Source of the DNA: Laetmonice hystrix
Taxonomy: Eukaryota
Assembly: GCA_965235115.1 (NCBI GenBank)
Contig: OZ249450.1
Location: 15,438,001-15,502,000, forward strand
Reading direction: 5' to 3'
Length of the DNA: 64,000 nt
Part shown: in pieces, positions 11,401 to 44,300 of the stretch
How positions within the stretch are numbered: position 1 is the stretch's first letter
How the letters are laid out: each line of letters starts with the position of its first letter
Made by a program: the position numbers and the translations under genes
Notes under the pieces: generated by a model
What the model was told of the DNA's origin: nothing
Seen by the model: the letters and a program-made list of their open reading frames with translations, nothing else
Databases searched by the model: none

Positions 11401-14400
11401 AGAAACAAATATGGCCGCCATCTCGCCATTTTGGATCTGAATTGAAATTTTATTGTGATGAATATTGGCCCTCATTATGCCTCATCCCTGCACCATGTTT
11501 GAAAGAAATCGTGATTGTTTTGGCTGAGTTATTGCTCAAAATGTGTTTTCATCCAAAATGGCCGCCAAGCGGCCATTTTTAATGATATCAAAAATCTGTT
11601 TGACGTGCATCATCCTCAGTTCATCCCTGATCCTTGTGTGAAGTTTCAAAGAAATCGACCCATACACTTCTGAGAAATCGCTGTCTACGGACATACGGAC
11701 GGACGGACGGACGGCCGTACGGACGGACGGACGGAGGTCGAATTATAAGCCCCCCGTTGTGGGGGCTAATTAAACCAACCAGCAGACATAGCAAAAAAAA
11801 GTAAAGAACGGAAATCCACATTTTAATCTTGACTGTATTCTGAGTAAATTGCTTCTTGACAACAAGACCTATCTCGATGATAAAACCACTCTAGACGCCA
11901 GCTCTAACGTTGGAGTTTTTTTGGTGCCCCCCCCCCCTTTCTTCCAGGCTGAGACTGGAGTGTGGAAATTAATGAGAGTAACAGACTAGTTAACAGAATT
12001 TACCAGTCTGTCGGAATGCGTACTTTAGCAACGTTGGTGAATGAACCACAATCGGGCCTTGGAGTCGACAGCTCTCAGCCAGCGAGTGCACTGCCACCTG
12101 GCGTTCATGAGGCGGGTTACTTGGATCCCCGCCACCCAAAGGCGTTGGGCCTGGGGGAAACTTTGGGGTTATAATATAATACACCACCACCCAAAGCTTA
12201 CCGATAACGTGAGACTAAGAGTGCTTATCAGTTGGAGGATAAATAGTATACTAATAGGCACAGTACGGTACAGTGCTGGGTGAAACCGGATTAGTTACCC
12301 GGTAGAACTTTTTCTAAATGACAATGTCACTGTATCTCACAGAGACTGTCACGACTTTGCCTGAGATTAAATACGCTATATGATTGGTGGTATGGGTAGT
12401 TAGGCTTCTAAAATTGCACGTGACTTGATGCACGCATGTCATGATGTGCGTGTCCCTAACAGGAATTAAATGCGCTCTGTAAATCACTATTAAGTTTCTT
12501 TTTGAAACCCTGAACAAATTTACAAGCATTCATTGTGTATGCAAATAATTGCATGTTATACTCTTCACCTCCCAACCCTGATGCCGTTTTTAAAGACTCA
12601 CATTGATAATCATGTACAGTCTGGTACAATATATTGTTTTGGGTTCTGGCATGTGGGGCACATAAAAAGTCGGCAGTCATGACAGGTTTTGATGTGGGCC
12701 ACTGGGACAGTGGCACAGTAACTTACTTAAAAAGAAGACTCTCACAATCCCAATTTGACCCCATATTTCATTTTGTCAACCCAGTAATGTGCACTCTTGC
12801 CGTTCTAGTATGTTATATGTATGCATTGATCAGTATTCCAGTATTCTGAACTGAACTTTGGGGAAGGAGAGGTACCACGTGGAGTAACGAGGCTAGCAAG
12901 TGGAAGATGGCCTTACTGGTTGTTTTTGTGTCTAAACATCTGCAGAAATATTTGTCACTGTCTGGGAGAAAAAAAAATCAAGGTAGAATGTCCGTGGCCT
13001 AAGGAAACGTCCACGACACGAGCAGTCTCACAGCAAGCTATGTTAGCACAAAGAGGGAGTTCTTACCTTTGCGTTATTTATTAACCAAGGTCAAGTTACC
13101 ATGAGGAATAACAAAAAGCCACACTACGAGCAGTGCTGTTTATAGAGACACCCTGCATACCTGGCACACCCTGAACCAAGTAAACCTTGCGGACAGCACA
13201 CCGTTTGACTGGCTCTTGTTCAGGGGGCACTGGTATAGATTTGTAGTACACTTGATTAAAGTTAAGTCTGACCAGGGCGGCGTTAAAAAATTGTTTGTTA
13301 CAAAGAATATTCTAGGAAAAAATCAGATGAGGCAGGGAGGGGACAAAATTGTTTGAAATATTCCCCCCCCCCCCCCCTGATGGAAGAGATCACGCATGAA
13401 ATATCGAAATGGCGCTAATCTGCCTCACAGACCATTCTGGTATTCAATGCAGCTCATTCAATGTATGCACACACGTGTATATATTTTATATTCAATGTTA
13501 AAGTTTAAAAAGATGGATTCTATACTAATGTAATGTATCAAAAATTATCGAAACTAACTCCTTGTCTTGAGTTGCAGTTCTCAGTGCTGCGGTACCTAGT
13601 AAAATCCGCCCTTCCCCAACCTCAGGTTCAGCCGTTTCTTTTGTCATGTACCGGTAGTCGAAATGTTGGTCTGGGTTGGGGGTTACACAAATGTGTAGGT
13701 CTGGGCAAGACTGCATCTATTCTCATGTAGAACTACGGCCTGTACCCGGCCGGGTGCCAACAACCTCGGCCGTGTATCAATGCGGCACAAATCCATTAGG
13801 CAAATTATTCACGCCCGCTATGGGATCTACAGGTTTCTGGCTACAACCACGGTATTCATAAATTTGACCTTTGTCAGGACATGTATAGACAGCAATTCCG
13901 AGATGCTCTGCATTTCTCTCGGATATTTTAATAAGCACTGACCTCAATAACTGTTCAAAGATGATTGCTTAATTATGAAAATTATTTAATACGTATTCCT
14001 TTTTTCTCTGAATTTTCTATGAATATATTTCCCAAAATGAGCACTTTGAGAACCGGCAATTTTCTTCATTACCGCTGAAGATATTTTAATAAGCACTGAC
14101 CTCAATAACTGTTCAAAGATGATTGCTTAATTATGAAAATTATTTAATACGTATTCCTTTTTTCTCTGAATTTTCTATGAATATATTTCCCAAAATGAGC
14201 ACTTTGAGAACCGGCAATTTTCTTCATTACCGCTGAAGATATATGCTTAACAAGAACAGAATGAGCAACACTTGGGACAGTTCTGCAGGCCGTCATGTCA
14301 AACATGTAGACTTACATGTCAGTAACCCAATATCTGGGCCTGTGGTGAGGAGAGGCCTGGAGAATGTAACATCCTCCTCAGGAGTACAGCACCAACAACC

Positions 14401-28880: not shown

Positions 28881-31800
28881 CTAGCAACATGAAGATTTAG
28901 ACTCTCTACCACCTAAAGGATCTCCTAGTGCCACTCTCTCCCCATCAGCACGCTCCTCTGTGTATCCCATGGACTGATCGTTCTGGAGAATCTACAAACA
29001 CAGTAAAAGTAATCCTGCACAAAAACTACAACTAAAATCATTCAGGAGCAATTTCATTGAATTTAAGCACGATTACTTCATTAGTACCATTCATAAATTT
29101 CATTCAAAGAAATAAAATCCAATACACCTGAACGGCAACAAGTCCCTTTAAACCACACTAATATTATGTTATCTTATAGAAAAGGACGTGCTATATCTCC
29201 ATTTCCAAAGGTTAGAAAAAGGTAGAACTCACTTTTGAGACTAAACATCTTGCAGCGTCATCAATGTTGATATTTTCCTTTGCTGAAGTTTCGAACCAAG
29301 ACACGAATCCCTTGTCTCTGCAGTACTCGGCCATCTGAGATGTGTTGTTGACAAGTCCTTCCTTGGCTTGGTCACACTAGACAATAACCATTACATGATT
29401 TAACATCAATTTTCTATGTATAATTTAGACTAGGATAATCATGCAAAAGCAAAACAACACATAAGTAAATAATTAAAAATACTGAAAAGTTAGGAATTAG
29501 ATATCAATTAACATCATATGTACAATATATAATTTCATATGCAAGTACTGTACATATTGATAAATAAAAAAAAGAATGTTACATTGGAAAAGTGACAAAG
29601 CCATGCCAAACAACAACATTCTATATGATAAATCAGTGAGCCTAACAGATGGGTACTAGTGATTTAAAACCTATGATAGGTAACATGGGAGGCACTCGTG
29701 ATGAGACTGGTGAGGTTTAAGTACAACCATAGCCTGGAGGGAACTTGATATGTACCGTACATAGCCTTTATCATGTGTGGGAAGTTTTGCTTTTATCAAG
29801 AGACTTAACCAACAATGCTCAATTATTGAATTAATGGCTGATCTAAGAAATCTGATCAATGGTATAATTTATAAGAACCCACTCATGAGCTTGCTGCAAA
29901 CTTTTTAGTTTAACTTGATTTGTGGAAATGACCTTTGTAGACTAACATGTAACAAATGTGCTATGACGTCCAACTCTCTAAGTACCTTGTTGGCAAGAAG
30001 CACACATGGCACTGATGTACCGTCGGGAAGCTGTACTTTACTGTCGAGATCATTCTTCCACTTCTGTACAGCTTCAAAGGTGGATGCACGGGTGACGTCA
30101 AACACAATGAAACAGCCAACAGCTTCTTTGTAATAGACCCGCGTCATGTTGCCAAATCTCTCCTGGCCTAGCACAGACAGAAGAGCCACATGGTGCATAC
30201 ATTTTGACATTTGACATATAACTCTACAGTTCATGACCTGATGCCTAAAGGCATTTTCAACATGTCACTTCTTTATGTAACTCATAATTTATTAATTCAC
30301 TTCATTTAAAAGTACAGTGGACTGGTTTAAAAAAAGGCTTTTCCCTCTCAATCAATTATTATGCATAATACTTTAATATGGTTCTTTTTAATATTTTAAA
30401 TTCACCAGGTTAGAAATAAAAGTATTTGAGATGTTAAAAGCATGTGTTTGCATGGACAGGTTTAAGTACATATATATTTACAAACCCATTGACAATAAGA
30501 GTCATGACGTTTACTACTGGCAGGTTTCACCATAATGGGTGTCCTCTTCACCGAGGTACCAACTTGAGAGGTTGTCCTTACCTGCTATGTCCCATAACTG
30601 TAACCGTATAAGGGTGTCAGCATCCCAGTTGATGACTTTCAGAGCAAAGTCAACCCCTATCTGAGATATACAATTAAGGTACAGACTAGGGCATGAAAAG
30701 TGGTGTACACTAAACTGCTACATTTATTTCCCATGTAATCATTTAGGGTCAAACTTGGGACAGAACCCCAAACAATTTTCCTGTCTCATTATGAAGAATG
30801 GTACAGCACAGGCACCTCAACTCAGTTACACATTTGAAATTAAGGAATTCTATATCAATTGTTCCTTGCCTAAAGATTAGTTAACTGCCAAACTATTTTC
30901 ATGACTCAACTTTTGTTCACAAGGATACAGTTGCCCTGTAGTGTTGAGAAAAGAACTGGTGGACGTATCGCTTGATGATGCTCGTCTTCCCTGTACCTAA
31001 CTCCCCAATAACCAGCACTTTGTATAAGTGTTCTCGTTTTTCTCCTCCAGCTGCCTGGAATGAAAGATAGAGAAAGAAATACAAAATGTAGTTAAATACT
31101 GGAACACATATCCTTTCTTAGATAAAGCAGTGCAAAAACCTTTGCTTTCAACTATTTAAACTAGACCAATCCATGATATCCTGAACACCCATTTTCATTT
31201 TAAGTAAATGTGTTAAACGGTGAAGTAGGTAGCGTCTATCTATATGGGTGGGGGGGGGCAGAATCTCTCGGAAGTCATTTGTTCCTACACGTGCTCGAGA
31301 AGTTATCAGTACACACCTTGACCTACATTTCTGTGTATATGAGATTTTTCTCTTGTGTTCTATTTTTTTTTCTAATTCAAGGGTCGATATCCAAGTTGTT
31401 CATATTGTTTCAACTTTTATACTCTGTATAAAGTATATCAGAATTTTGAAGGGCCAATTGGTGACTACAATTATAAAATGACTACTGCTGGGTCAGGAAA
31501 AGTAAGGACAACTTTGTAATTAGTCAAGAAATTTCAACATTTGTCAAATTTAATGTCAGTAAAAAATCATGGAAACAATACAGTCAGCTAAGGGGGGTGC
31601 TAGCAAAACAACAACACAAACTATTATAATAGTGCTAAAAAAAAGTCATGATCAAGAAACTGAGCCAAGTCAGGAAAATTTCAGGAAGCTTCAGTGCTGA
31701 TCCTTTATGGCAAAAGGACCCTCAAAATACGCTGCCAGTGGGCAGATTATCATGAATTAAATTCCATTGGCAACCCATATGGTTTTTGAATCATGTACAA

Positions 31801-33208: not shown

Positions 33209-34145
33209 AGATGGAATGTTTTGAAAAAGTTACACGTGTCGAACTGACAGTGGGATGATAATGATCAGTCACATGTCAATTATACACAACTACCAGCTTG
33301 AATACAACTTTGTCTTGGGGTCGGTAAGTGCCTGGGACTCCTTTGGCTTTGTATGTATGGCCACAGTGCGTCATACACTACAGAACCAGAGCAGAGGGGG
33401 CGGTCGTCAGGGCCGAAAATTGCTTGGCATTGAATTTGAATGCTAACGTTACCCTCTGCTAAATCGCCCCCCCCCCCAGAAAAAACAACAAAAAACTGCT
33501 GGGATGGGGGGGGGGGGGGAGAGGGGGGAGAGGAGGGGGGGAGATGCCTGTTTTTTTTTCTTCTGGCCAAACTTTTTTTTTTACTTCCAACGATAAAACT
33601 AAACTTTTTATTTCTCCCTGATCAAAAGCAAACAATTTTTCCCCTGAGGCTGAGGGGGCAGAGTGCCAGAGACAAACTTTTTTCATTTAGGGGTCTCATA
33701 TATTGTTATCCTGTAAATTCCTGTTTCACAGAGGTTAAAGAAAATCTCCTGTTCCTAGATCTCATCTTTAATACAGTAGGAATATCAGATGCGAACAATC
33801 CTTTCGTTCGCTTGTCGTTCACCTAAAATTTTGCAAGCCTGGGATGACAGGTGAACGGTCGTTTCGTTCGCCTGTCGGTTACCTAAAATAAAAAACAGGG
33901 GAACGAAAAATGGGTTACGCAAATTTCCCTTAATTTCAGGCCTGAATATATGACTGTAGATCTACTGTAGCTTTGAACCATGCAGTACTTTTATAATATG
34001 GTCTACTATTATTAGGGTATAAAACAAATTTCATGTTCTAGTCCAATTGTCTTCACAGATTAGATTTGTCACATTTTGTGGCCTTTCAAATGTTAGGTTG
34101 ATGTTAGGTCCACAAATTAATGGCCATTGTTGTCTACTAGCAGCC

Positions 34146-37100
34146 ATGAAATTACGATCAGGAGTGAAGACTACGCCCAGTGAAGAGGGTATGGGATCGG
34201 ATAGAGGTGACAAGGCAGCCATGGAGTCCCTGGACCACACTGTGACATTCTTCAGATTCAGGTTCAACTATGTAGTCGTGGTCACCCATTTCAACATTTT
34301 TCTCTATGCATCATGCTTTTTCATACAAATTGGAACATTACCAGTGAGTATATGATAAATTTGAGGCAGTTTTGAACTCAGAAGAATGTCATGAGAAACC
34401 TAATGAAGCCTCCAAAGACATTGCACCGATTTTGTAGCATGATATTTTTTAAATTTTACCATTCTGATTTTTAGCCTTCATGTTGAATGATGGTTTATTG
34501 AGCAGTCTTGATTACATGTGTGCATTGTACATTGAATTACACGAGTACTATAATAATTTCAGTATCTCAGCAAGAAGCTTGGTGTGGATGTCACCATGTT
34601 TGGGTACCTGCAGACAATGTTTGCTGTGGTACAACTGTGCGGAGGTCCCCTCTTTGGTCGTTTTGGGGATCTGTTTGGCGGCCGAGCAGCGTTGACTTTG
34701 GCATTTGCATCTGCAGCATTAAGTTATGGCCTCATGGGATTTGCATACAGTTTTCCAGCACTTTTGTTGTCAAGACTACCTTCCATTTTCATGCATGCAA
34801 TGCAAGGTATGCATTTTATAATTTTCTAGATTTTCTTTCTTGTCAGTGTTTCAGTTCCACTTATATTTCAGTAGAGAAGCCACACATTTTTCTCTACACA
34901 TTTGTTTGGCCTCTGAATATTTTCCCCATGTTTTTTTTTCAGTTTTATTAAATGTAATAGCCAGCATGTATAATCTCTGCGAGATATCATCTAAGTAAAT
35001 GTATTTGATTTTATGGGGACTGTTTCCTACTAGGTGGTCAGATGGTTGTGACAGATTTGACAGATTCCTCACAGCGAGCAGATGCTCTTGGAAAACTGGG
35101 TGTGTCCTATGGTGTTGGCATGGTAGTCGGACCATTTATAGGAGGAATAATTAACACACAATTTGGGTAAGATAGTGTTATCCTAGACAATCATTAAATT
35201 TTTAATCTAAACATTTGAGTAATAGCCTGTATTAGACTTTTTTTTCTGTCTTCATAGTGTCAATTATGAGAGGAGTAAAACTTTGAAAGTGACAAATCAT
35301 GTACTTTGATCATTTACTCTACAAAGTACAATATTAAAATACTGTGCATGCACTGCTGTGTACTAACAGGGAGCACCAGGCAGCCCTCGTGGCGTGTGCA
35401 GGATCATTATTCAGTATGGTTATGGTGAGGCTGACACTCCCCTCCCACACCAAGAAGAGTCCTGTCACAACTGACGATGAAGGTATTAGTTTCAAAGCAA
35501 AAAGATTCCAAAGCTATTTTGTTAAGAAAAGGAATTTTTCTAAAAAGTTGAGTTTCACCATGGGATAATTTGTTGAGGCCCCAATTAATTACTTCTTAGC
35601 AACACAACATGTAAATATTTTGCATTTATAGGGAAATCAAAAACATCTGTCTTCAACTTCAAGAAAATATTCTCCCTCCTGCGGGGCAACCCTCAGGCAT
35701 TAACACTGCTGACCATTAAGACTGTGATAGGTAAGGTTTATAGTCATATACCTTTCTACATATAATTATACCTAAAATGTATAAATTTGTATAAATCAAA
35801 AAGTCTGATTCATCCTAAAATAGGAATCTCTGCAGAGTATGGCCCATCTTACAATTTTTTCTAAGACATCAGAGTAGACGTGTAAAAAATTATTTAATGC
35901 ATTAAGTATTAGGTGTCTCGAGAACAAAACGAGCATTATTTTAATCATAAGTGATATTATTATGTTGTTAACTGAGACTGTGAGTCACAGAGTGTGAGCA
36001 CTGTATCAGCAACATTACTCGGTGCAGATGGTGATAGTTGCTATGATGCTAGGCGTGGCAGTAACCATAATATTTATTTGTTCTGTATCATTAATGAATG
36101 TGAACCAGTAAGAAGGGTGAACTCGTGCAATCCGTAATATACCTTTGATTGCAGGAATACCACTAGGTATTTTCCAAAGCATGTTTAGTATATTTGCCAT
36201 GGAGAAGTTCCGACTGGCAGCCGACCAGAATGGTTACATTATGTCCTACATTGGCATAGTGTCCATGGTGAGTTAGAAACACACCCACTGCATGATGGAC
36301 ACTTGGACTGTGCAAACTTCAACTGTTATCATTTTTGTTTGATCTCTTCCAGTTGTTTGCGTTTTTGTTGTGTTTTCTTCCCCTCAGTTATTTTGATCAT
36401 ATATTTTTACTGCTTTGGTTAAAGGTTCCTAATTTTCGCAGCTTTTTAATGCACGTTGTGTGTTTGATGGCCAGGAATTCCTCTGGGGTTGTGGCAAAGC
36501 ATTATGGGAATGGTCACACTGGAGGTGTTTCAGCTTGAGCCCCACCAGAACGGCTACATCACTTCGTATGTGGGCGTCATGGCCATGGTTAGTCTTACAT
36601 CTACAAATGCTTTGTCAGTAGAAGCCCCAGATTGAAAATTTTAAGGACTTTAGGTACTGAAACTTCTGTTTTACTATTGTCCTTTGTCAGAAATATTACC
36701 AAGCCATGCTTGCTGGAGAAGGTTTTTTTTTCACTCCAAAGAGGATTCCCACCCCTTTGTCATTCTCGGGGGAGCCATCATTAGCACCTAATACTGTGCT
36801 TCAAAATGCATAATTGTAGTAGCACATTAATGTTTAATGCTAGAGCTCTTTCCCATTCTTCATTTCATCAGCAAATTACTAACATTCATTGAGAATGCAA
36901 AAATGTTTTATTATTAATTCAAGTTTTATTAGTTGAATATTTAATTGCTATTTATTTGTTTGAATATTGTGGAAATGCCCCAAGATTAAGAGAGACATTT
37001 ACCAGTATTCGGGCAAGGGCCGGGGGATTGGGGTAACATGATTGAGGCTCTCTCATTTATAAGGCTTGATATTTGAGATTTCCCAATGAGAGATATTGTG

Positions 37101-39791
37101 ATATGAGCCAACATATAAGATGGTGTCTTGATTAACAAGCAATATAGATAATACAAACTTCCTTATTTTACCTGTGGACAATTATTGAAAGTTGGGTGTC
37201 TACTATGTGTTATGTTGACAGGTAGCTCAGAAAGTTGTCCCAGTAGCCTAAATTGTGTGTTCTTTTTCAGTTGATTCAAGGTGTTGGAATAGGTTTGCTG
37301 ACAAAGCGTTTCTCCGAGAATTCCCTGATTAAATGGGCCTCCTTCACATTAATATGGTCTTGGCTACTGATGGTACGTATAGTTAGAGTATTATACCAAT
37401 AGCATTATTTTATCTTATCTGCATTACCTAAACTATGGTCATCTTCATTATTAGCTTCTTGGTATTGGATGCTATCAGTAACTTTCGCCTGACCATAGTC
37501 TTGAGGATTCACGTTGTGAGGAATCAGATAGTGTGCTCCGGGTCGTATGATATGAAGTTTAGCCCAGCCTCCACCAGATGTGATCTGACATGCAGTGGGA
37601 TTTGACTAATTAAAAGAATTACTTTTAGACTTAGCATTATCATTCAAAATGACTGTTAAATTTGTTAAAATATTGGCTGGCTCTACGGTTAATAATATTG
37701 CCTGAGTATGTGGTTGACAATGTTGAACAACCTTCTTCCAGGCATTTGTGCAGAATGTGTGGCAGCTGTGTATAGTGATGCTCCCCAAGGTCTTCGGGCT
37801 TGTCATCATAACAGTAGTTATCAGTAGCAGCATCACCAAGACTGTGCCGAGTGCTGACACTGGTAGGTTATTAAATATGTTCGTTTCCTTCCCCATTATT
37901 AAACCAATTTCGTAGAGTCCTGTAGAATAAACCTCGTATAATATAGAAAGAAAGCTATCTTTGTTAAATAATTAAACCAATGTGTAGAAAAGCTTTATTT
38001 TGATGTTTTATAATTCCAACAAAAAAAGTAAAAATCATGGAAAGAACCATTTTCTGATAGGTAGGCCTAGCATACATGTTCATCAACAGAGGTGCACGCC
38101 AGACTACCCAGTAATATGTTGTTAATTTCTAGCCAGTTGACAGGAGATTGGCCGACTTGTATCTTAATATAAAGTGCTCCAGATATCTTAATTGATCAGT
38201 TTGGTTTTATATCGTACAGAAAGCCAAGTCAAAGCTGGTGGCCACACTTGTTTGTATTTCAGGAACCATGCTTGGTATTAACATGGCTGTCCACTCGCTT
38301 GTAGGCACCTTGTCGCCAACCATTGGTGGCAGAATGATGGCTGAGTATGGTTTCTCCTCAATCAGCTATCTTGGGGCCGTTGCAAGCACTTTGGTCTTTA
38401 TAGCAGTCACACTTCGGCACTTCAACTCATACATTCAGCTGGACGACGAAGCAGATTCTCAGCTTTGCTTGAAAAGTGAGGCGACAGCTTCTTTTCAGGA
38501 TAAGCCCAGTTCTGGAAGTTGTATCGGAGGGAACTGTTGAAATCACACGATTCAGTCTCATTTATTTATAAGGAGAACTAACAAGAACTACATCTTTGCA
38601 GGGGCCATGAGGTTCTAATTATGAACCTCAAAACTGATGAGAAAAGTGTGTAGGAATTAAAATGAAGTACCGTATACAGGAGTATTGTAACATCTGCAAC
38701 GTTGATAAACAGGAATTTAAAAAGGATACCAGCACATGGGACTCCTTTGTTGCGGAAAGCATTGAAGTTGTGGGAAGACAATGTCATGATAACCCCAGTC
38801 AAGTACTGTGTACTTTTATTCCTCTGTCAGTAAGTGACATCTCTATGCGGAACTAAAACATGGCAGAAAGGTTTCTCTCTCCTATCATTATTGTCCCTGA
38901 CTCTCATTATTTCATTTTGTTTCAGGTATATTTCGTTTTTCTGTTGCTTGAGATTCTTTGTAACTGTGCTGCATTATTGTGATAGTTTACCGAATTAATA
39001 CAATATCTGTATTAATTCAAAAGGGCATCTGATTTATCCAAAAAGGACGCATTTTTGCCCAATACTGCTGATTCCTTTTAGCAACATCTAATGCTGCCCC
39101 CTGGTGGCCAAAGTCGACGGCCTGTAAGTCATTTATCATGGGAGCTCTCACCGTGGTTAAGGATGTTCATGATACATGTGCCATGATATTTTCCTTACTG
39201 TCATTGATTTTTATTGCATGGGTTTTGTATATGGATCACCTGATTTGAATAGCTCAGTATTTCTCAGATTGTACATGTATTCCTGTCAGTGTATGTGTAT
39301 CTTCCAAGACTTGCGTCATTCAATAACTTTTTTTTTTTTGAAGTCCTATATACCGTACAGGGGACAATCTGCTAGACTGTATCAAGATTAGTTTTAAGAG
39401 GATTCCCCGACGTATAAGTATCCCATTTTATTATTTGGGACCTGCATGCTGCCGTATTATTTAGTAATTCGACGAGGGCTCCCTAGTCGACCGCCTCAAA
39501 ATTCAATCAAATTTTTGCATGCCAGTATATAAATGAGGACTTCAATCTTTGCTACATTTAATTTTGTATATTGCGATTTCTATTGACATGTACATTTATC
39601 TAGCTTTTGCCGTTGGTGTGATAGGTGCGATGCTCGGAATCAACATGGCTGTCAACTCTATGATCCGCACCGTCTCGCCGACAATCGGTGGGCTCATGCT
39701 CCAACATCTCGGATTCTCTTCCTTTGGTTATTTTGGATGTGTTACCGGCATTGTTGTAACGTCTTATCTCTTCAGCAAGGTCAATGATTAA
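34146..39791 (+). CDS. SLC22A18: SLC22A18-like major facilitator superfamily transporter with alternative exons
   Basis: Exons 34146-34343, 34563-34806, 35034-35166, 35370-35482, 35632-35730, [36155-36267 or 36475-36587], 37271-37372, 37742-37862, [38263-38540 or 39625-39791]. Motifs FGYLQT.F.VVQLCGGPLFGRFGDLFG.RAAL (MFS motif A), SRLPSIFMHAMQGGQMVVTDL, RADALGKLGVSYGVGMVVGP and DTG.MLG match the SLC22A18 family. Confidence 0.9.
36155..36267 (+). CDS. SLC22A18: SLC22A18-like mutually exclusive exon, copy A
   Basis: 113 nt, phase 1 to 0, gattgcag|..ATG|gtgagt; (G)IPLGIFQSMFSIFAMEKFRLAADQNGYIMSYIGIVSM. Confidence 0.9.
36475..36587 (+). CDS. SLC22A18: SLC22A18-like mutually exclusive exon, copy B
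   Basis: 113 nt, phase 1 to 0, atggccag|..ATG|gttagt; (G)IPLGLWQSIMGMVTLEVFQLEPHQNGYITSYVGVMAM, 19/38 identical to copy A. Confidence 0.82.
38263..38540 (+). CDS. SLC22A18: SLC22A18-like alternative last exon, copy A (long tail)
   Basis: ttgtatttcag| phase 1; (G)TMLGINMAVHSLVGTLSPTIGGRMMAEYGFSSISYLG...GSCIGGNC-stop. Confidence 0.85.
39092..39110 (-). promoter_or_regulatory. Near-consensus CTCF site between the two alternative last exons
   Basis: The reverse complement reads TGGCCACCAGGGGGCAGCA. Confidence 0.55.
39625..39791 (+). CDS. SLC22A18: SLC22A18-like alternative last exon, copy B (short tail)
   Basis: ggtgtgatag| phase 1; (G)AMLGINMAVNSMIRTVSPTIGGLMLQHLGFSSFGYFG...FSKVND-stop. Confidence 0.85.
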
Positions 39792-40110
39792 AGTATATAT
39801 TTACATGGAGACACAGTGCTGAGGATAGTTTCTTCTCTGAACAAATTCAGGTCGAGTATAGTCGACTTTTAGTGACGGATTTCATTTATAAAGCGGTTGT
39901 GATGAAATATTGGTTTGGCCGAATATCGGGAGGAAAGAATTTTTAAGTCTTCTTTAATTAAGTAGTGTAAAGTGAGGGATAAATTCATACATGAACTCCC
40001 ATGCATAAACACCTTTTTTATATAAAGCGTCATTATTATCCCTGAATTTCAGAAGCACCATATAGGCCCCTACATGGGAGATTACGGTAGATGGCTGTTT
40101 TGATTTATAG

Positions 40111-40278
40111 CAGGGGCGTAGACAAGTGGTAAAATCTGGGGGGGCTATGGATTGTTGTTAACTTGAAGACTGTGCTAGAAAGCAACCTGGGGCACAAAGG
40201 TTATAGGTTATTATAGGCTACCCTTAAAAATCTGGGGGGGCTGAAGCCCCCCCAAGCCCCCCCTTGTCTACGCCCCTG
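40111..40278. mobile_element. MITE (168 bp) with TIR CAGGGGCGTAGACAAG
   Basis: 16-bp perfect TIR; TATAG directly repeated on both flanks; internal G/C runs. Confidence 0.85.
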
Positions 40279-41395
40279 TATAGTTAGGGGTGATATATGT
40301 AGATAATGAATTGCTTTGATATTCGAACTCCGTGCTGCGAGGTGATAATGGTCCCACAAAGACAAAAAAACACACACAAAAGAACACCCACGGGCAACGT
40401 GTACATAGAAAAGGGTGGGGGAGGTTATAGTAAACCACATTTTCAGGGAACTGTTATGCCAGCCTTACAACAGAAGCCCATTACAAGTTTCAGACTAAAA
40501 TATTGTAACATACTCGAAAGATATCTGAGCTTATTATATTTTTGGTGGTATGTGTTTTAAATGTATGCTCAGGGTGACCACAGAAAGGAAACCACCTTTC
40601 AGGCTAGCCATGCTGCCACCCAAGGGTTGCAGATTGAAATTCCACCCGAAGGGATAATTTGTATAATTTTTATTTTCGTGAATATTGTTCTTATGGTTAT
40701 CAGCAGAGTATTCATCTATTATAAAAACCTAACAAATCGCTTAGACTAAACACCGAAACCAACCGACCAAACCGACCAAGTCAATGAAATCCAGCTCAAC
40801 CTGCCCACATACTGAACAACACGTTAAGGTTAGGGTTAGCTTTATATGGTCGGTTTCGGTAAATTCGCTCAGTTCCGGCGTTTACGTTCACCCTGACCGC
40901 ACATGTACTTTTTATGACAATTAGGAGAAACTGTGACGATTATCTTACAATATGAAGGTATATCCGTTGTAATTCTCCAATGTCCACAGTGGTTTCATTG
41001 TTAACTTTGTGACTTGTGCCAATGATGCACAGTTTGTCCTGGTATCGGCGTCCTTCTGACATATTCTTGGTGGTACATACAGAATACTGTATGCTTACCA
41101 CGTTGTTAATCTGTATATCAATGTCTTATTATTAAAACTTTTGATCACTTTGCTTCTCCTGAATGCAGTTATGTTTCTTGTCGGGCCCATTATATTTGTG
41201 ACTTCGTCACAAAGTCAATATGTCCCAAGGCAAACCATATCACCAGCAAAGCTCATTTAATTACGATGGTTCAAAGGTAAAGTTCTTTTGGCAAGTCAAA
41301 AGGTGATACAATAGTTATAAAAAAAAAAGTGGAATAATGCAGTTTTTGTACATAGTTAATGTTCCATATATCTAGGTGGTAGATTCAAGCCTGAT

Positions 41396-44300
41396 TTAAA
41401 AAAAAAAAAAACTTTCCCAAGGCGACATAGGCGACCTATTCAACTGTTCTGTATGAAGATCTGACGGTGACCTTAGATGACCTTGGGTGGGAGGGTCAGA
41501 CTTATGCGATCCGCGCCTGAGCCGTATATTATTCTTCTCTTCTTTGGTTAAATCGGGGTGCCACATATCGATAATCAGAACCAGGCGGAGCGTGTCGCCG
41601 TCATGCCAAACTTCGTGCTCAAACGAGTCGTCAAATACAATGAACTTGCCTTCCTCCCACGTCCTAGGAAACAACAAGAACAGATGCTGAGGCGAACGTA
41701 GGATTCGTTTTCAAGTGCCCGTGATATTTCCTTCCAGTTCAATATTCCCGATTATATAGACGTCACAAGGGGGGAGGGGGCACTGCCCCCCTTGGGCCTG
41801 CCCCCAAAAATATAGATTGTAGATTTTTTTTTATTGCATAGTATTAATTATTTCTAGATCTGTTTTTGTATAGACCTATGTAACAACCATGTTCCACTAC
41901 CTCAAGCAACCCCCCCCCCCCCCCATATGTTATCTATTTCACCGCTATACTGTAAGGCCGGTTTATAGTCCGTCGGCCGACCATCGGCCGACCATCGGCC
42001 GACCATCGCTCGACGTCAGGTCAAAGTTCACGCAGGCTTAACTCCCAGCGATCGGTCGATCGACGGCCGGATCGCTGGACTATAAACGTTCAGCGATGGT
42101 CGACCGATGGTCGGCCGACGGACTATAAACCGGCCTGTAGGCTTCTTATAACTATATTATATTTGGATGTATAGCCTAGCACAAATGGCACAAACTCCAG
42201 AGATTTACACGTCTCTTATACTAGATAATATGTTGATGATTTATAATGCCAAGAGTAGAGAATTAATGGACTTCATTGAAATTCCCCCTATGCAGGTGGA
42301 CAGTTCTTAATTTACGATCTTTCATCTCCCTCGGATTTCTCTGAGATTATTTCAATAATGTATTAAAATCATGACTTTTTGAATCCATTTTTTAATATGC
42401 TGGGATGTAGCAATGCACATAAACCTTGTTTCTTCACCGACACGGATGCGGGCCCCATCTGGTACAACAAGTCCGAGATGGGATCGGATTCGGGAGTTGG
42501 TCGGGCCACAGTGGGGCCAAAGATGGACGCCTGGATGCATCACAGAGAACTTGATCTGCCAAATCAAAGTAATCACCGACAATCGTTTTTACTACACATG
42601 AGAGTCCTTGCAATTATATTTGAAATTTCTCTTCCAGTTGATAGATTCGTCTGAATCGTCACTGGTTAACACTTCCTGGGCCCGTTTTTATTTTTGGTTT
42701 CCTTTTCCACCGTGAGCAAGGGTGAGCTGAGCTGAGCAAAGGGTGGGCATGAGCTCATTCTCACCGTTTTCGTGTTTTTTTGGGTTGCTCTTTTCCATGA
42801 GACGTGCTCATGGTGAGCAAGCTCCCGGAAAAAAACAAAAAACAAAAAAAAAACGAAAACGGTGAGCATGAGCTTCTGCTCACCCTTGCTCAGCTCAGCT
42901 CACCCTTGCTCACGGTGGAAAAGTAAAAAAAAAAAACGGCCCAGGTATGAATAAAATGTTTTTATGATGTTTTTGTGAGCCGGGACCCACCTGTCCGCGA
43001 CCACAGGAAATCGCGTCTGTGAATTCCTCCACCAAGGCGCAAGTCTTTGGAACCTTTTTACAGTTGGCTTCAATTTTTCTTCCTGGAGGAAATAGACACG
43101 GAAAATAAGAGGTTTTTTAAAACTTAATGTGTGATTATAGATTTCCACAGAAGAGACAGATTTGATATTATTCTCACCTCTTCTATAAAGCCTAAATTGT
43201 TTCCAGTTTCCGCTTTCCTGAAGGTCTTGCGTATCATCGAGGAAAGATCCAGTCGATGGGTCAAGTTGTGCCAGACCCTCGTCTCGTATCAACATCCAGT
43301 TCTCCTCAAGTTTCTGAAACAGTAACAAGAAAAAATGCTAAAGACGATCTGTCTGGATAACAATAAAGTGCCCAGCAAAATGTATGTTTTATGAAATTTG
43401 TTGTAAAAAACGTTTATACATTCCTTTATATATTTGAACGAGGTCGGGCTGTACTTGATCTCACCTGACATAATACGAATGGTATTACCTTTAAATTTTA
43501 ACAATACATAAAATACACGACACACTGCGAACTTAGATACTAGCAGTCACACTTCTACATTCCTAACACTTTACGTACCTGTAAATGTTCAAGGTTTCCT
43601 GTCTGTTGTTTTGTCCACCAGGGCTGCGATACCAGATGGTCTATGTTCTTTATAGATCGTTGCAACACGGAGCGAAACAAGCCTTTCTCTACACCAAGTT
43701 CATGAATCTTTCGAGACTAATGGTAAAAAACGGTAAAGGTTATCTTTGATAAAAATAAAACTGTCAATCATATGCCTCAAAGTGATTACAATTTTTCTCA
43801 ATTGATACAGATCTATCTCAACAAATTAAGTTACGGTGTTACACTGCCAATTCAAATCTCAACATAGAATTCGTTTATTGCCGAATTTTGTTCAATCTTT
43901 TAATTAAATTACATTCTTTTAAAATAGGTTGAGTAATGCCAAAGCCGTCCACTACTCAGTAGAGGGCTTTAATGCAGACGATACTCAGTCTATATATCTA
44001 TCTGTAAACGTGATTTGTGTAAACAGTCCACTCGTGTCAGACTGAGCCTCGCCTTATTGTGCTCGCCCACCCTGTAGTAGGCGTCACCGAGATTGATGTA
44101 GTAGGTCTGCTTTATAGTCCCCTCCTCCCCACTGTCAATCCCGCGCTGGAGGAGGGGGATGGCGGTGTCGAGTTCCCGGTCAATCGTCTTTATAATCACC
44201 CCAAGGTTAACGAGAGATAACCCATCATCTGGCTTCTCCTTCAGAACTTCCTAAAAATCCATGAAACTTTGAAAGGATATATTCGGTTTTCAGTAAGGAC

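What the first reader, a model, noticed from the sequence alone, without database searches (positions are those of the whole stretch)
38263..39791. Second switch in the same gene: two homologous alternative last exons (2 x 2 carrier isoforms)
Both terminal exons take the phase-1 donor at 37862 and encode TM11-TM12 (G.MLGINMAV.S...T.SPTIGG.M....GFSS..Y.G). One ends in an extra tail of about 40 aa (..DDEADSQLCLKSE..GGNC), the other stops right after TM12. I found no second copies of the two intervening exons, so this is exon-level modularity rather than a whole-gene tandem duplicate. TM7 and TM11 both face the cavity, so coupled choice could build distinct C-domains and sorting tails from one gene.
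Basis: partly seen in the sequence, partly recalled or inferred. Interest (0 to 1): 0.72.

Follow-up and report, generated by a model that had tools for sequence, protein, structure and literature searches.

The report
Duplicated last exon in a transporter gene
An invertebrate SLC22A18-type membrane transporter gene has two diverged copies of its last coding exon: RNA shows the downstream, ancestral copy in use, the upstream copy is kept by selection but unseen in RNA, and duplicated-exon switches like this are well known.

Summary
Two homologous open segments, 38263-38540 (9A, 92 codons) and 39625-39791 (9B, 55 codons), each follow an AG acceptor in phase with the phase-1 donor at 37862. Both encode TM11-TM12 of a single-copy SLC22A18-like MFS transporter. 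In the window only this exon and exon 6 are doubled.

- **9B is used.** One run with spliced contigs (X4) joins E5>E6A>E7>E8>9B (joint 37862^39625, GT..AG). It has no depth over 9A.
- **9B is the ancestral form.** Five complete loci of other animals have one last exon, of the 9B type, and no 9A-type copy in the last intron. Three further partial loci also carry only the 9B type.
- **9A is not decaying.** Against 9B, synonymous sites are saturated (dS about 2.6) while dN is 0.32. All six heterozygous differences in 9A are third-position, five of them synonymous.
- **9A has an orthologue.** A 70-aa ORF in another assembly (P0001) shares 9A's derived changes at two near-invariant columns (Arg15 to Gly, Gly36 to Ser) and a new Arg24.

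Best reading, about 0.6: a lineage-restricted pair of alternative last exons from tandem duplication. 9B is the default; 9A would be a conditional variant with an altered TM11 and a 40-aa tail. The "2 x 2, coupled" idea has no support: only 6A+9B was seen. This is a new member of a known kind.

The parts
37742..37862 (+). Exon 8 (TM10), ending in the shared phase-1 donor ACACTG|gtaggt
   Evidence: Gene model. RNA joints 37372^37742 and 37862^39625 in run X4.
38263..38540 (+). Exon 9A: upstream, derived copy of the last coding exon (TM11-TM12 plus a 40-aa tail, stop TGA at 38538-38540). Candidate alternative last exon.
   Evidence: Open frame and acceptor. 58% identical to 9B. dN 0.32 against dS 2.6. 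Six of six heterozygous SNPs at third codon positions, five synonymous. Orthologous ORF P0001. No depth in the spliced run X4.
38656..38661 (+). ATTAAA hexamer 116 nt after the 9A stop: the only canonical-type poly(A) signal between 9A and 9B (candidate only)
   Evidence: Pattern scan. Its use is not shown.
38613..39199 (.). Low-level transcribed piece between 9A and 9B (depth about 11, against about 95 for the mRNA contig). Strand and connection unknown.
   Evidence: X4 contig record 26, carrying this locus's own heterozygous alleles. The stretch is single-copy in the genome. No Pfam hit for its ORF.
39625..39791 (+). Exon 9B: downstream, ancestral and expressed last coding exon (TM11-TM12, stop TAA just after TM12)
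   Evidence: RNA joint 37862^39625 with GT..AG ends, and a contig that starts exactly at the exon boundary. It is the type found as the only last exon in other animals' loci.
39792..39943 (+). Start of the 3' UTR behind 9B. Its end is not determined: it runs into a high-copy repeat at about 40110-40280.
   Evidence: X4 contig records 27 and 28.
36155..36587 (+). Context: the other doubled exon of the same gene, E6A at 36155-36267 (ancestral type, seen in RNA) and E6B at 36475-36587 (derived type, unseen)
   Evidence: RNA joints 35730^36155 and 36267^37271. Other species have a single E6 of the A type.

Best explanation
The last coding exon of a single-copy SLC22A18-like MFS transporter gene was duplicated in tandem long ago, in this animal's lineage.

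- **9B**, the downstream copy, keeps the family's ancestral TM11-TM12 sequence and is the default terminal exon. This is shown: RNA joins exon 8 to it.
- **9A**, the upstream copy, lies inside what is otherwise the last intron. It has a good acceptor in the same phase, its own stop codon and a 40-aa cytosolic tail. Purifying selection has kept it, together with an orthologous copy in another species.
- **The likely mechanism** (inferred) is that 9A is an alternative last exon. When its acceptor is used together with a nearby cleavage/poly(A) site, the mRNA ends there. The carrier then gets a different TM11-TM12: the family-invariant Arg of TM11 is replaced by Gly, a new Arg sits nine residues further on, and an acidic tail is added. 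Otherwise 9A is skipped as intron and 9B is used.
- **When 9A is used** is unknown. It was not seen in the one spliced data set available.
For: Anatomy:
- Both exons are in phase with the donor at 37862 and give full ORFs of 441 and 404 aa.
- Only E6 and E9 are doubled in the window.
- 9A and the spacer are single-copy in the genome.

9B use:
- X4 contig record 25 joins E5>E6A>E7>E8>9B with GT..AG at every joint.
- A contig of depth 173 starts exactly at 39624/5.

9B is ancestral:
- L005, L007, L008, L009/L010 and L011/L012 each have one last exon, 57-66% identical to 9B and 46-59% to 9A.
- Their E8-E9 introns, 0.4-3.6 kb long, hold no second copy.

9A is under selection:
- Third-codon identity to 9B is 36%. 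NG86 gives dS 2.6 and dN 0.32.
- Six of six heterozygous SNPs fall at third positions, five synonymous and one Asp to Glu. P is about 0.001-0.003 under neutrality.
- P0001 from another assembly is 76% identical over the 45 aligned TM columns (57% over 68 residues by BLASTP, tail included). It pairs with 9A at SH-aLRT 98.
- P0001 shares 9A's departures at columns that are Arg in 72 of 73 and Gly in 72 of 73 other homologues, and shares the new Arg24.
Against: - No RNA evidence for 9A. X4 has zero depth over 38161-38554. The contig through exon 8 runs on into 9B without a break at the exon 8 end, so an E8>9A junction was rare or absent in that sample.
- Contigs drop rare forms, and there is only one sample from one individual.
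- 9A has lost two residues that are near-invariant in the family, which could also mean relaxed constraint.
- No poly(A) site is demonstrated for either exon.
- The transcribed piece 38613-39199 runs past the only ATTAAA behind 9A and is unexplained.
- P0001's DNA could not be fetched. So whether that species also has a 9B copy, and the synonymous divergence between the two 9A orthologues, are unknown.
Confidence: 0.62

Rival explanations
1. 9A is an unused relic. It is a duplicated exon that is no longer spliced into mRNA, or never was, and only 9B makes protein.
For: - The only spliced data show E8>9B and no depth over 9A.
- 9A lacks the Arg and the Gly that 72 of 73 homologues keep.
- Other animals manage with one 9B-type exon.
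Against: - A neutral copy would not stay open over 92 codons after synonymous sites saturated. dN/dS is about 0.12.
- Polymorphism is confined to third positions.
- A second species keeps an open orthologue with the same derived residues.
- The acceptor is intact and pyrimidine-rich, 13 of 20.
Confidence: 0.2
2. 9A is expressed, but not as a simple alternative last exon. Either it is an internal exon whose transcript goes on into downstream sequence (the 38613-39199 piece and/or 9B as untranslated tail, perhaps degraded by NMD as a regulatory isoform), or it belongs to a separate transcription unit.
For: - A locus-specific transcribed piece lies just behind the 9A stop. It runs beyond the ATTAAA at 38656.
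- The contig graph has a second way into the start of 9B: the contig breaks exactly at 39624.
Against: - No joint connects that piece to anything in the joint table.
- Selection on the 9A protein sequence and tail argues for a translated product rather than a purely regulatory transcript.
- No other MFS exons lie nearby that could form a separate gene.
Confidence: 0.1
3. This is the reader's fuller model: two independent or coupled switches (6A/6B and 9A/9B) give four carrier isoforms with matched C-domains.
For: - Both pairs exist and all four combinations are in frame.
Against: - Only 6A+9B is observed.
- Full-length homologues elsewhere are 6A-type whatever their exon 9 type, so there is no sign of 6B/9A co-variation.
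Confidence: 0.1

Closest known systems
Tandem duplicated exon substitution events at the C-terminus (for example 77 of 236 human events swap one C-terminal region for a homologous one, PMC9741552; tropomyosin 3' exons; the clusters of terminal exons in Drosophila pip, PMC9013439)
   Same: - Adjacent homologous exons produced by tandem duplication.
- Same splice phase, each copy with its own stop codon.
- The swapped region is made of transmembrane helices plus a tail.
- Both copies are under purifying selection.
   Different: - Mutually exclusive use is shown only for one member (9B).
- The pair is restricted to one lineage: it is absent from five other animals' complete loci. Most human events are ancient and widely shared.
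SLC22A18 (OCT family organic cation transporter-like MFS transporter 18)
   Same: - Homologues of the exon peptides carry this name (P0017, P0063, P0027, P0091 from JGI; P0095 from NCBI).
- MFS_1 domain.
- About 12 hydrophobic segments.
- Single copy in the genome.
   Different: - No functional data for this protein.
- The 9A form departs from the family at the TM11 Arg, which 72 of 73 homologues keep.
Mutually exclusive internal exons in carriers and channels
   Same: A homologous helix module is exchanged inside an otherwise constant transporter.
   Different: Here the choice is between terminal exons. It must therefore involve 3'-end formation as well as splice-site choice, not only splice-site competition or frame locking.

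Membership tests
SLC22A18-like MFS transporter | Pfam MFS_1 domain | tested here: met
   The exon 2 peptide alone scores 37.4 bits (cut-off 33.4). Exons 3, 9A and 9B give sub-threshold MFS_1 matches. The full-length spliced protein was not scanned because it has no reference.
SLC22A18-like MFS transporter | Closest named homologues are SLC22A18 / OCT-like member 18 | tested here: met
   Names on P0017 and on P0063, P0027, P0091 and P0095. The match is on the terminal exon only. Orthologous loci match along all exons.
SLC22A18-like MFS transporter | Twelve transmembrane helices, with exon 9 giving TM11-TM12 | tested here: inconclusive
   A Kyte-Doolittle scan finds 11 clear segments. TM11 (residues 350-372) is amphipathic and falls below the threshold. 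No structure model was made.
Tandem duplicated exon substitution (C-terminal) | Adjacent homologous exons of one gene, compatible in phase | tested here: met
Tandem duplicated exon substitution (C-terminal) | Both versions kept by purifying selection | tested here: met
   - dN 0.32 against dS 2.6.
- SNP pattern in 9A.
- 9A orthologue P0001.
- 9B-type exons across animals.
Tandem duplicated exon substitution (C-terminal) | Each version found in mature transcripts, never both together | tested here: inconclusive
   The E8>9B joint is seen. 9A is not seen in the single spliced run, which is held as contigs only.
Alternative last exons (splice choice coupled to polyadenylation) | A separate cleavage/poly(A) site behind each terminal exon | not testable with these tools
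   Only contigs were available. ATTAAA lies 116 nt after the 9A stop. No canonical hexamer follows 9B before 41131. Contigs cannot show RNA ends.

The most novel reading that the evidence does not exclude
The two derived exons, 6B (TM7 region) and 9A (TM11-TM12), are a co-adapted pair. 9A has the family's invariant TM11 arginine moved nine residues along the helix and carries an acidic tail. Spliced together by coordinated choice at two sites 3 kb apart, the pair would let one gene encode a second carrier with a different charge layout in the cavity, and so a different substrate or coupling, and a different sorting tail.
Probability: 0.12. Interest if true: 0.6.

Novelty: new member of a known kind. 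Interest (0 to 1): 0.33.

Why it matters
It gives a clean example from outside the model organisms of a transporter that diversifies its substrate-lining helices by exon duplication instead of gene duplication. It also offers a natural experiment on a family-invariant TM11 arginine: Arg15 to Gly together with a new Arg24. SLC22A18 is a poorly understood orphan carrier, so comparing the 9A and 9B forms could point to residues that set its specificity.

For genome annotation, the case shows that the proximal, longer and better-looking terminal exon is not the default one. An automatic gene model that stops at 9A would mis-state the main protein.

Tried and rejected
- **RNA runs.** The run search found no run on record as RNA. 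One of the four runs (X4) behaves as RNA: it has GT..AG joints and no intron depth. It is held only as contigs, so levels, ends and strand cannot be read.
- **A second species with both exons in tandem.**
  - The contig carrying the 9A orthologue P0001 (506 kb) and the one carrying the closest 9B relative P0036 could not be fetched because the files are too large.
  - A 53-aa + strand ORF lies 2.6 kb downstream of P0001. It has the length expected of a 9B-type ORF starting at its Met, but could not be identified. No hit of the profile search comes from a 506,188-bp contig.
  - P0020, P0037 and P0016 turned out to lie on other, short contigs.
- **Short-query search.** Word-index searches with the single exon peptides gave only one or two hits.
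- **Tree of 76 terminal-exon peptides** (52 columns). It supports the 9A+P0001 pair but cannot place that pair; most forks are open. So the duplication cannot be dated from it.
- **Whole-gene or partial paralogue as the source of 9B.** Rejected: there are no other MFS exons downstream, and 9B is joined to exon 8 in RNA.
- **Processed copy as the source of the spliced contig.** Rejected: the DNA runs show no such joints, and the genome has no other 9B copy.
- **Competing RNA structures between the exon 8 intron and the two acceptors.** Only 12-16-nt chance-level inverted repeats were found.
- **Flanking introns of 9A and 9B.** They share no similarity.

Full report
**What is in the sequence**

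On the + strand the window holds a nine-exon gene. Its exons are:

| Exon | Coordinates |
|---|---|
| E1 | 34221-34343 |
| E2 | 34563-34806 |
| E3 | 35034-35166 |
| E4 | 35370-35482 |
| E5 | 35632-35730 |
| E6A / E6B | 36155-36267 / 36475-36587 |
| E7 | 37271-37372 |
| E8 | 37742-37862 |
| 9A / 9B | 38263-38540 / 39625-39791 |

- All splice sites are GT..AG. Every one of the four exon combinations gives an uninterrupted ORF: 441 aa with 9A and 404 aa with 9B.
- 9A reads 92 codons. They cover the TM11-TM12 core and then a tail running from HFNSYIQLDDEADSQ to GGNC. 9B reads 55 codons and stops five residues after TM12.
- The two cores align without gaps at 47% identity over 55 residues, or 58% over the first 45.
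- tblastn of the spliced proteins against the whole window shows that only exon 6 and exon 9 have second copies.
- In the 627-Mb genome the only other hit is a 35%-identical paralogue on another chromosome. The 1-kb spacer between 9A and 9B is single-copy.

**Which gene it is**

- The exon peptides hit Pfam MFS_1.
- Homologues of the terminal exon carry the names [quoted passage not shown] and "solute carrier family 22 member 18-like".
- A hydropathy scan gives the expected helices. Exon 9 holds the amphipathic TM11, with the motif NS-IR-T-SPT-GG, and the hydrophobic TM12.
I did not test the taxon.

**RNA evidence**

No run is on record as RNA. Of the four runs from one individual, three behave as DNA, with contigs running through the introns. 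The fourth, X4, behaves as RNA.

- Its 1278-nt contig (depth 95) carries the joints 35730^36155, 36267^37271, 37372^37742 and 37862^39625. All have GT..AG ends, and X4 shows no depth over most intronic bins.
- The transcript seen is therefore E5>E6A>E7>E8>9B.
- A second contig (depth 173) starts exactly at the 9B boundary and runs into the 3' UTR.
- X4 has zero depth over 38161-38554, which includes 9A. The exon 8 contig continues into 9B without breaking at the exon 8 end, so an E8>9A junction was rare or absent in that sample.
- These are contigs from one sample. They show presence, not absence.
- A low-depth (about 11) X4 contig covers 38613-39199, just behind the 9A stop. It carries this locus's own alleles. 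Its connection and strand are unknown, so I leave it unexplained.

**Which copy is ancestral**

I fetched loci of the orthologous gene from other animals by way of ORFs called on their genomic contigs.

| Locus | Last exon | E8-E9 intron |
|---|---|---|
| L005 | one, 9B type | about 0.4 kb |
| L007 | one, 9B type | about 1 kb |
| L008 | one, 9B type | 3.6 kb |
| L009/L010 | one, 9B type | about 1.1 kb |
| L011/L012 | one, 9B type | about 0.6 kb |

- In these loci the last exon is 57-66% identical to 9B and 46-59% to 9A. tblastn finds no second copy in the E8-E9 intron or within the flanks held.
- All of these loci also have a single exon 6, of the 6A type.
- Three partial loci agree. L004 and L015 have one exon 9 close behind exon 8. 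L018 has no second copy within 1.1 kb upstream.
- 9B-type terminal exons are found as far away as reptiles.

So 9B and 6A are the ancestral forms, and 9A and 6B are additions specific to this lineage. The RNA form seen, 6A+9B, is the ancestral protein.

**Is 9A alive?** Four independent lines say yes.

1. **Old duplication, constrained protein.** Between 9A and 9B, third-codon identity is 36%, which is random. NG86 gives dS about 2.6 and dN 0.32. The flanking introns share nothing. The duplication is thus old, and the protein sequence stayed constrained on both branches. A neutral copy would not keep 92 codons open.
2. **Polymorphism pattern.** The sequenced individual is heterozygous at six sites in 9A: 38378, 38387, 38420, 38429, 38444 and 38447. 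All are third positions; five are synonymous and one is Asp to Glu. Four of them lie in the tail. The chance of six of six third positions is 0.0014, and of five or more synonymous is 0.003.
3. **An orthologue in another assembly.** A 70-aa ORF, P0001, lies on a 506-kb contig behind MFS exons. It is 76% identical to 9A over the 45 aligned TM columns, or 57% over 68 residues by BLASTP with part of the tail. It pairs with 9A at SH-aLRT 98.
4. **Shared derived residues.** 9A and P0001 share changes at columns that are otherwise near-invariant among 73 homologues. These are Arg15 to Gly (72 of 73 have Arg) and Gly36 to Ser (72 of 73 have Gly). Both have a new Arg at column 24, where the others have Tyr, Ile, Phe or Leu. 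Shared and conserved departures look like a specialised variant, not decay.

**Mechanism**

- **Shown:** 9B is a used terminal exon, and 9A is skipped in that RNA even though its acceptor tract (13 of 20 pyrimidines) is no weaker than 9B's (11 of 20).
- **Inferred:** 9A is a proximal alternative last exon. Its inclusion needs its acceptor plus a cleavage site nearby; ATTAAA at 38656 is the only canonical-type hexamer. When 9A is used, the carrier gets a TM11 with the arginine moved nine residues along, and an acidic tail with a cysteine at or near its end in both species (Cys-Asn in P0001).
- **Not shown:** any 9A transcript, any poly(A) site, or any coupling with exon 6.
- Full-length homologues elsewhere are 6A-type whatever their exon 9 type. 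No long complementary RNA elements of the docking/selector kind were found.

**Comparison with what is known**

Swaps of homologous C-terminal exons made by tandem duplication are an established class. [quoted passage not shown] This locus meets the structural and evolutionary criteria of that class. It has not yet met the transcript criterion for 9A. I file it as a new member of a known kind.

**Verdict**

| Question | Result |
|---|---|
| Observation | confirmed |
| Both exons are true alternative last exons, 9B default | about 0.62 |
| 9A is an unused relic | about 0.2 |
| 9A is used in some other transcript form | about 0.1 |
| Interest | modest, 0.33 |

The notable points are that the expected roles are reversed, with the tailed upstream exon being the derived one, and that a family-invariant arginine has been relocated.

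Noticed in passing
window 41399-41677 (- strand) and 40328-41145: This is the last coding exon of an aspartyl/asparaginyl beta-hydroxylase-domain gene on the minus strand (Pfam Asp_Arg_Hydrox, 57 bits, end of the domain). The gene converges on the transporter gene. RNA-like contigs of depth 290-425 over 40328-41145 are probably its 3' UTR, so the two genes' 3' ends lie within about 1 kb of each other or overlap.
   Followed up: partly
window 40110-40280: A high-copy repeat: summed contig depth reaches thousands in the DNA runs, with many loose ends. It sits in or just behind the 9B 3' UTR and hides the transcript's end in contig data.
   Followed up: no
window 29212-31084 (- strand): Exons of a Ras-family small GTPase (Pfam Ras, 52 bits) lie upstream of the transporter gene on the opposite strand. 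By eye the peptides look like Rab32/38.
   Followed up: partly
window 36155-36587: At the exon 6 switch the roles are the reverse of exon 9. The upstream copy 6A is the ancestral type: it is the only exon 6 in L005, L008, L009 and L011, at 59-73% identity against 45-53% for 6B. The downstream 6B is the derived copy. RNA shows 6A only.
   Followed up: partly
window 38613-39199: A single-copy stretch inside the E8-9B intron is transcribed at roughly a tenth of the mRNA contig's depth, while most other intronic bins show none. It has no Pfam hit and no joint to any exon. It could be the 9A 3' UTR, a retained intron part or an independent RNA.
   Followed up: partly
contig of P0001 (ENA ERZ26222911; no DNA held), ORF at 12599-12760 of the listed stretch: A 53-aa + strand ORF lies 2.6 kb downstream of the 9A-type ORF. 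That is the length a 9B-type ORF has when it is called from its first Met. If it is 9B-type, the tandem pair is shared by a second species.
   Followed up: partly
L011 2778-2987 and L012 1622-1831: In this compact orthologue exons 6 and 7 are fused into one exon (intron loss). In L006 exons 7-9 are contiguous.
   Followed up: no
window 33460-33560: Long C-runs and G-runs (low-complexity, G/C-rich) lie about 0.7 kb upstream of the transporter's start codon. They may be part of the promoter region.
   Followed up: no
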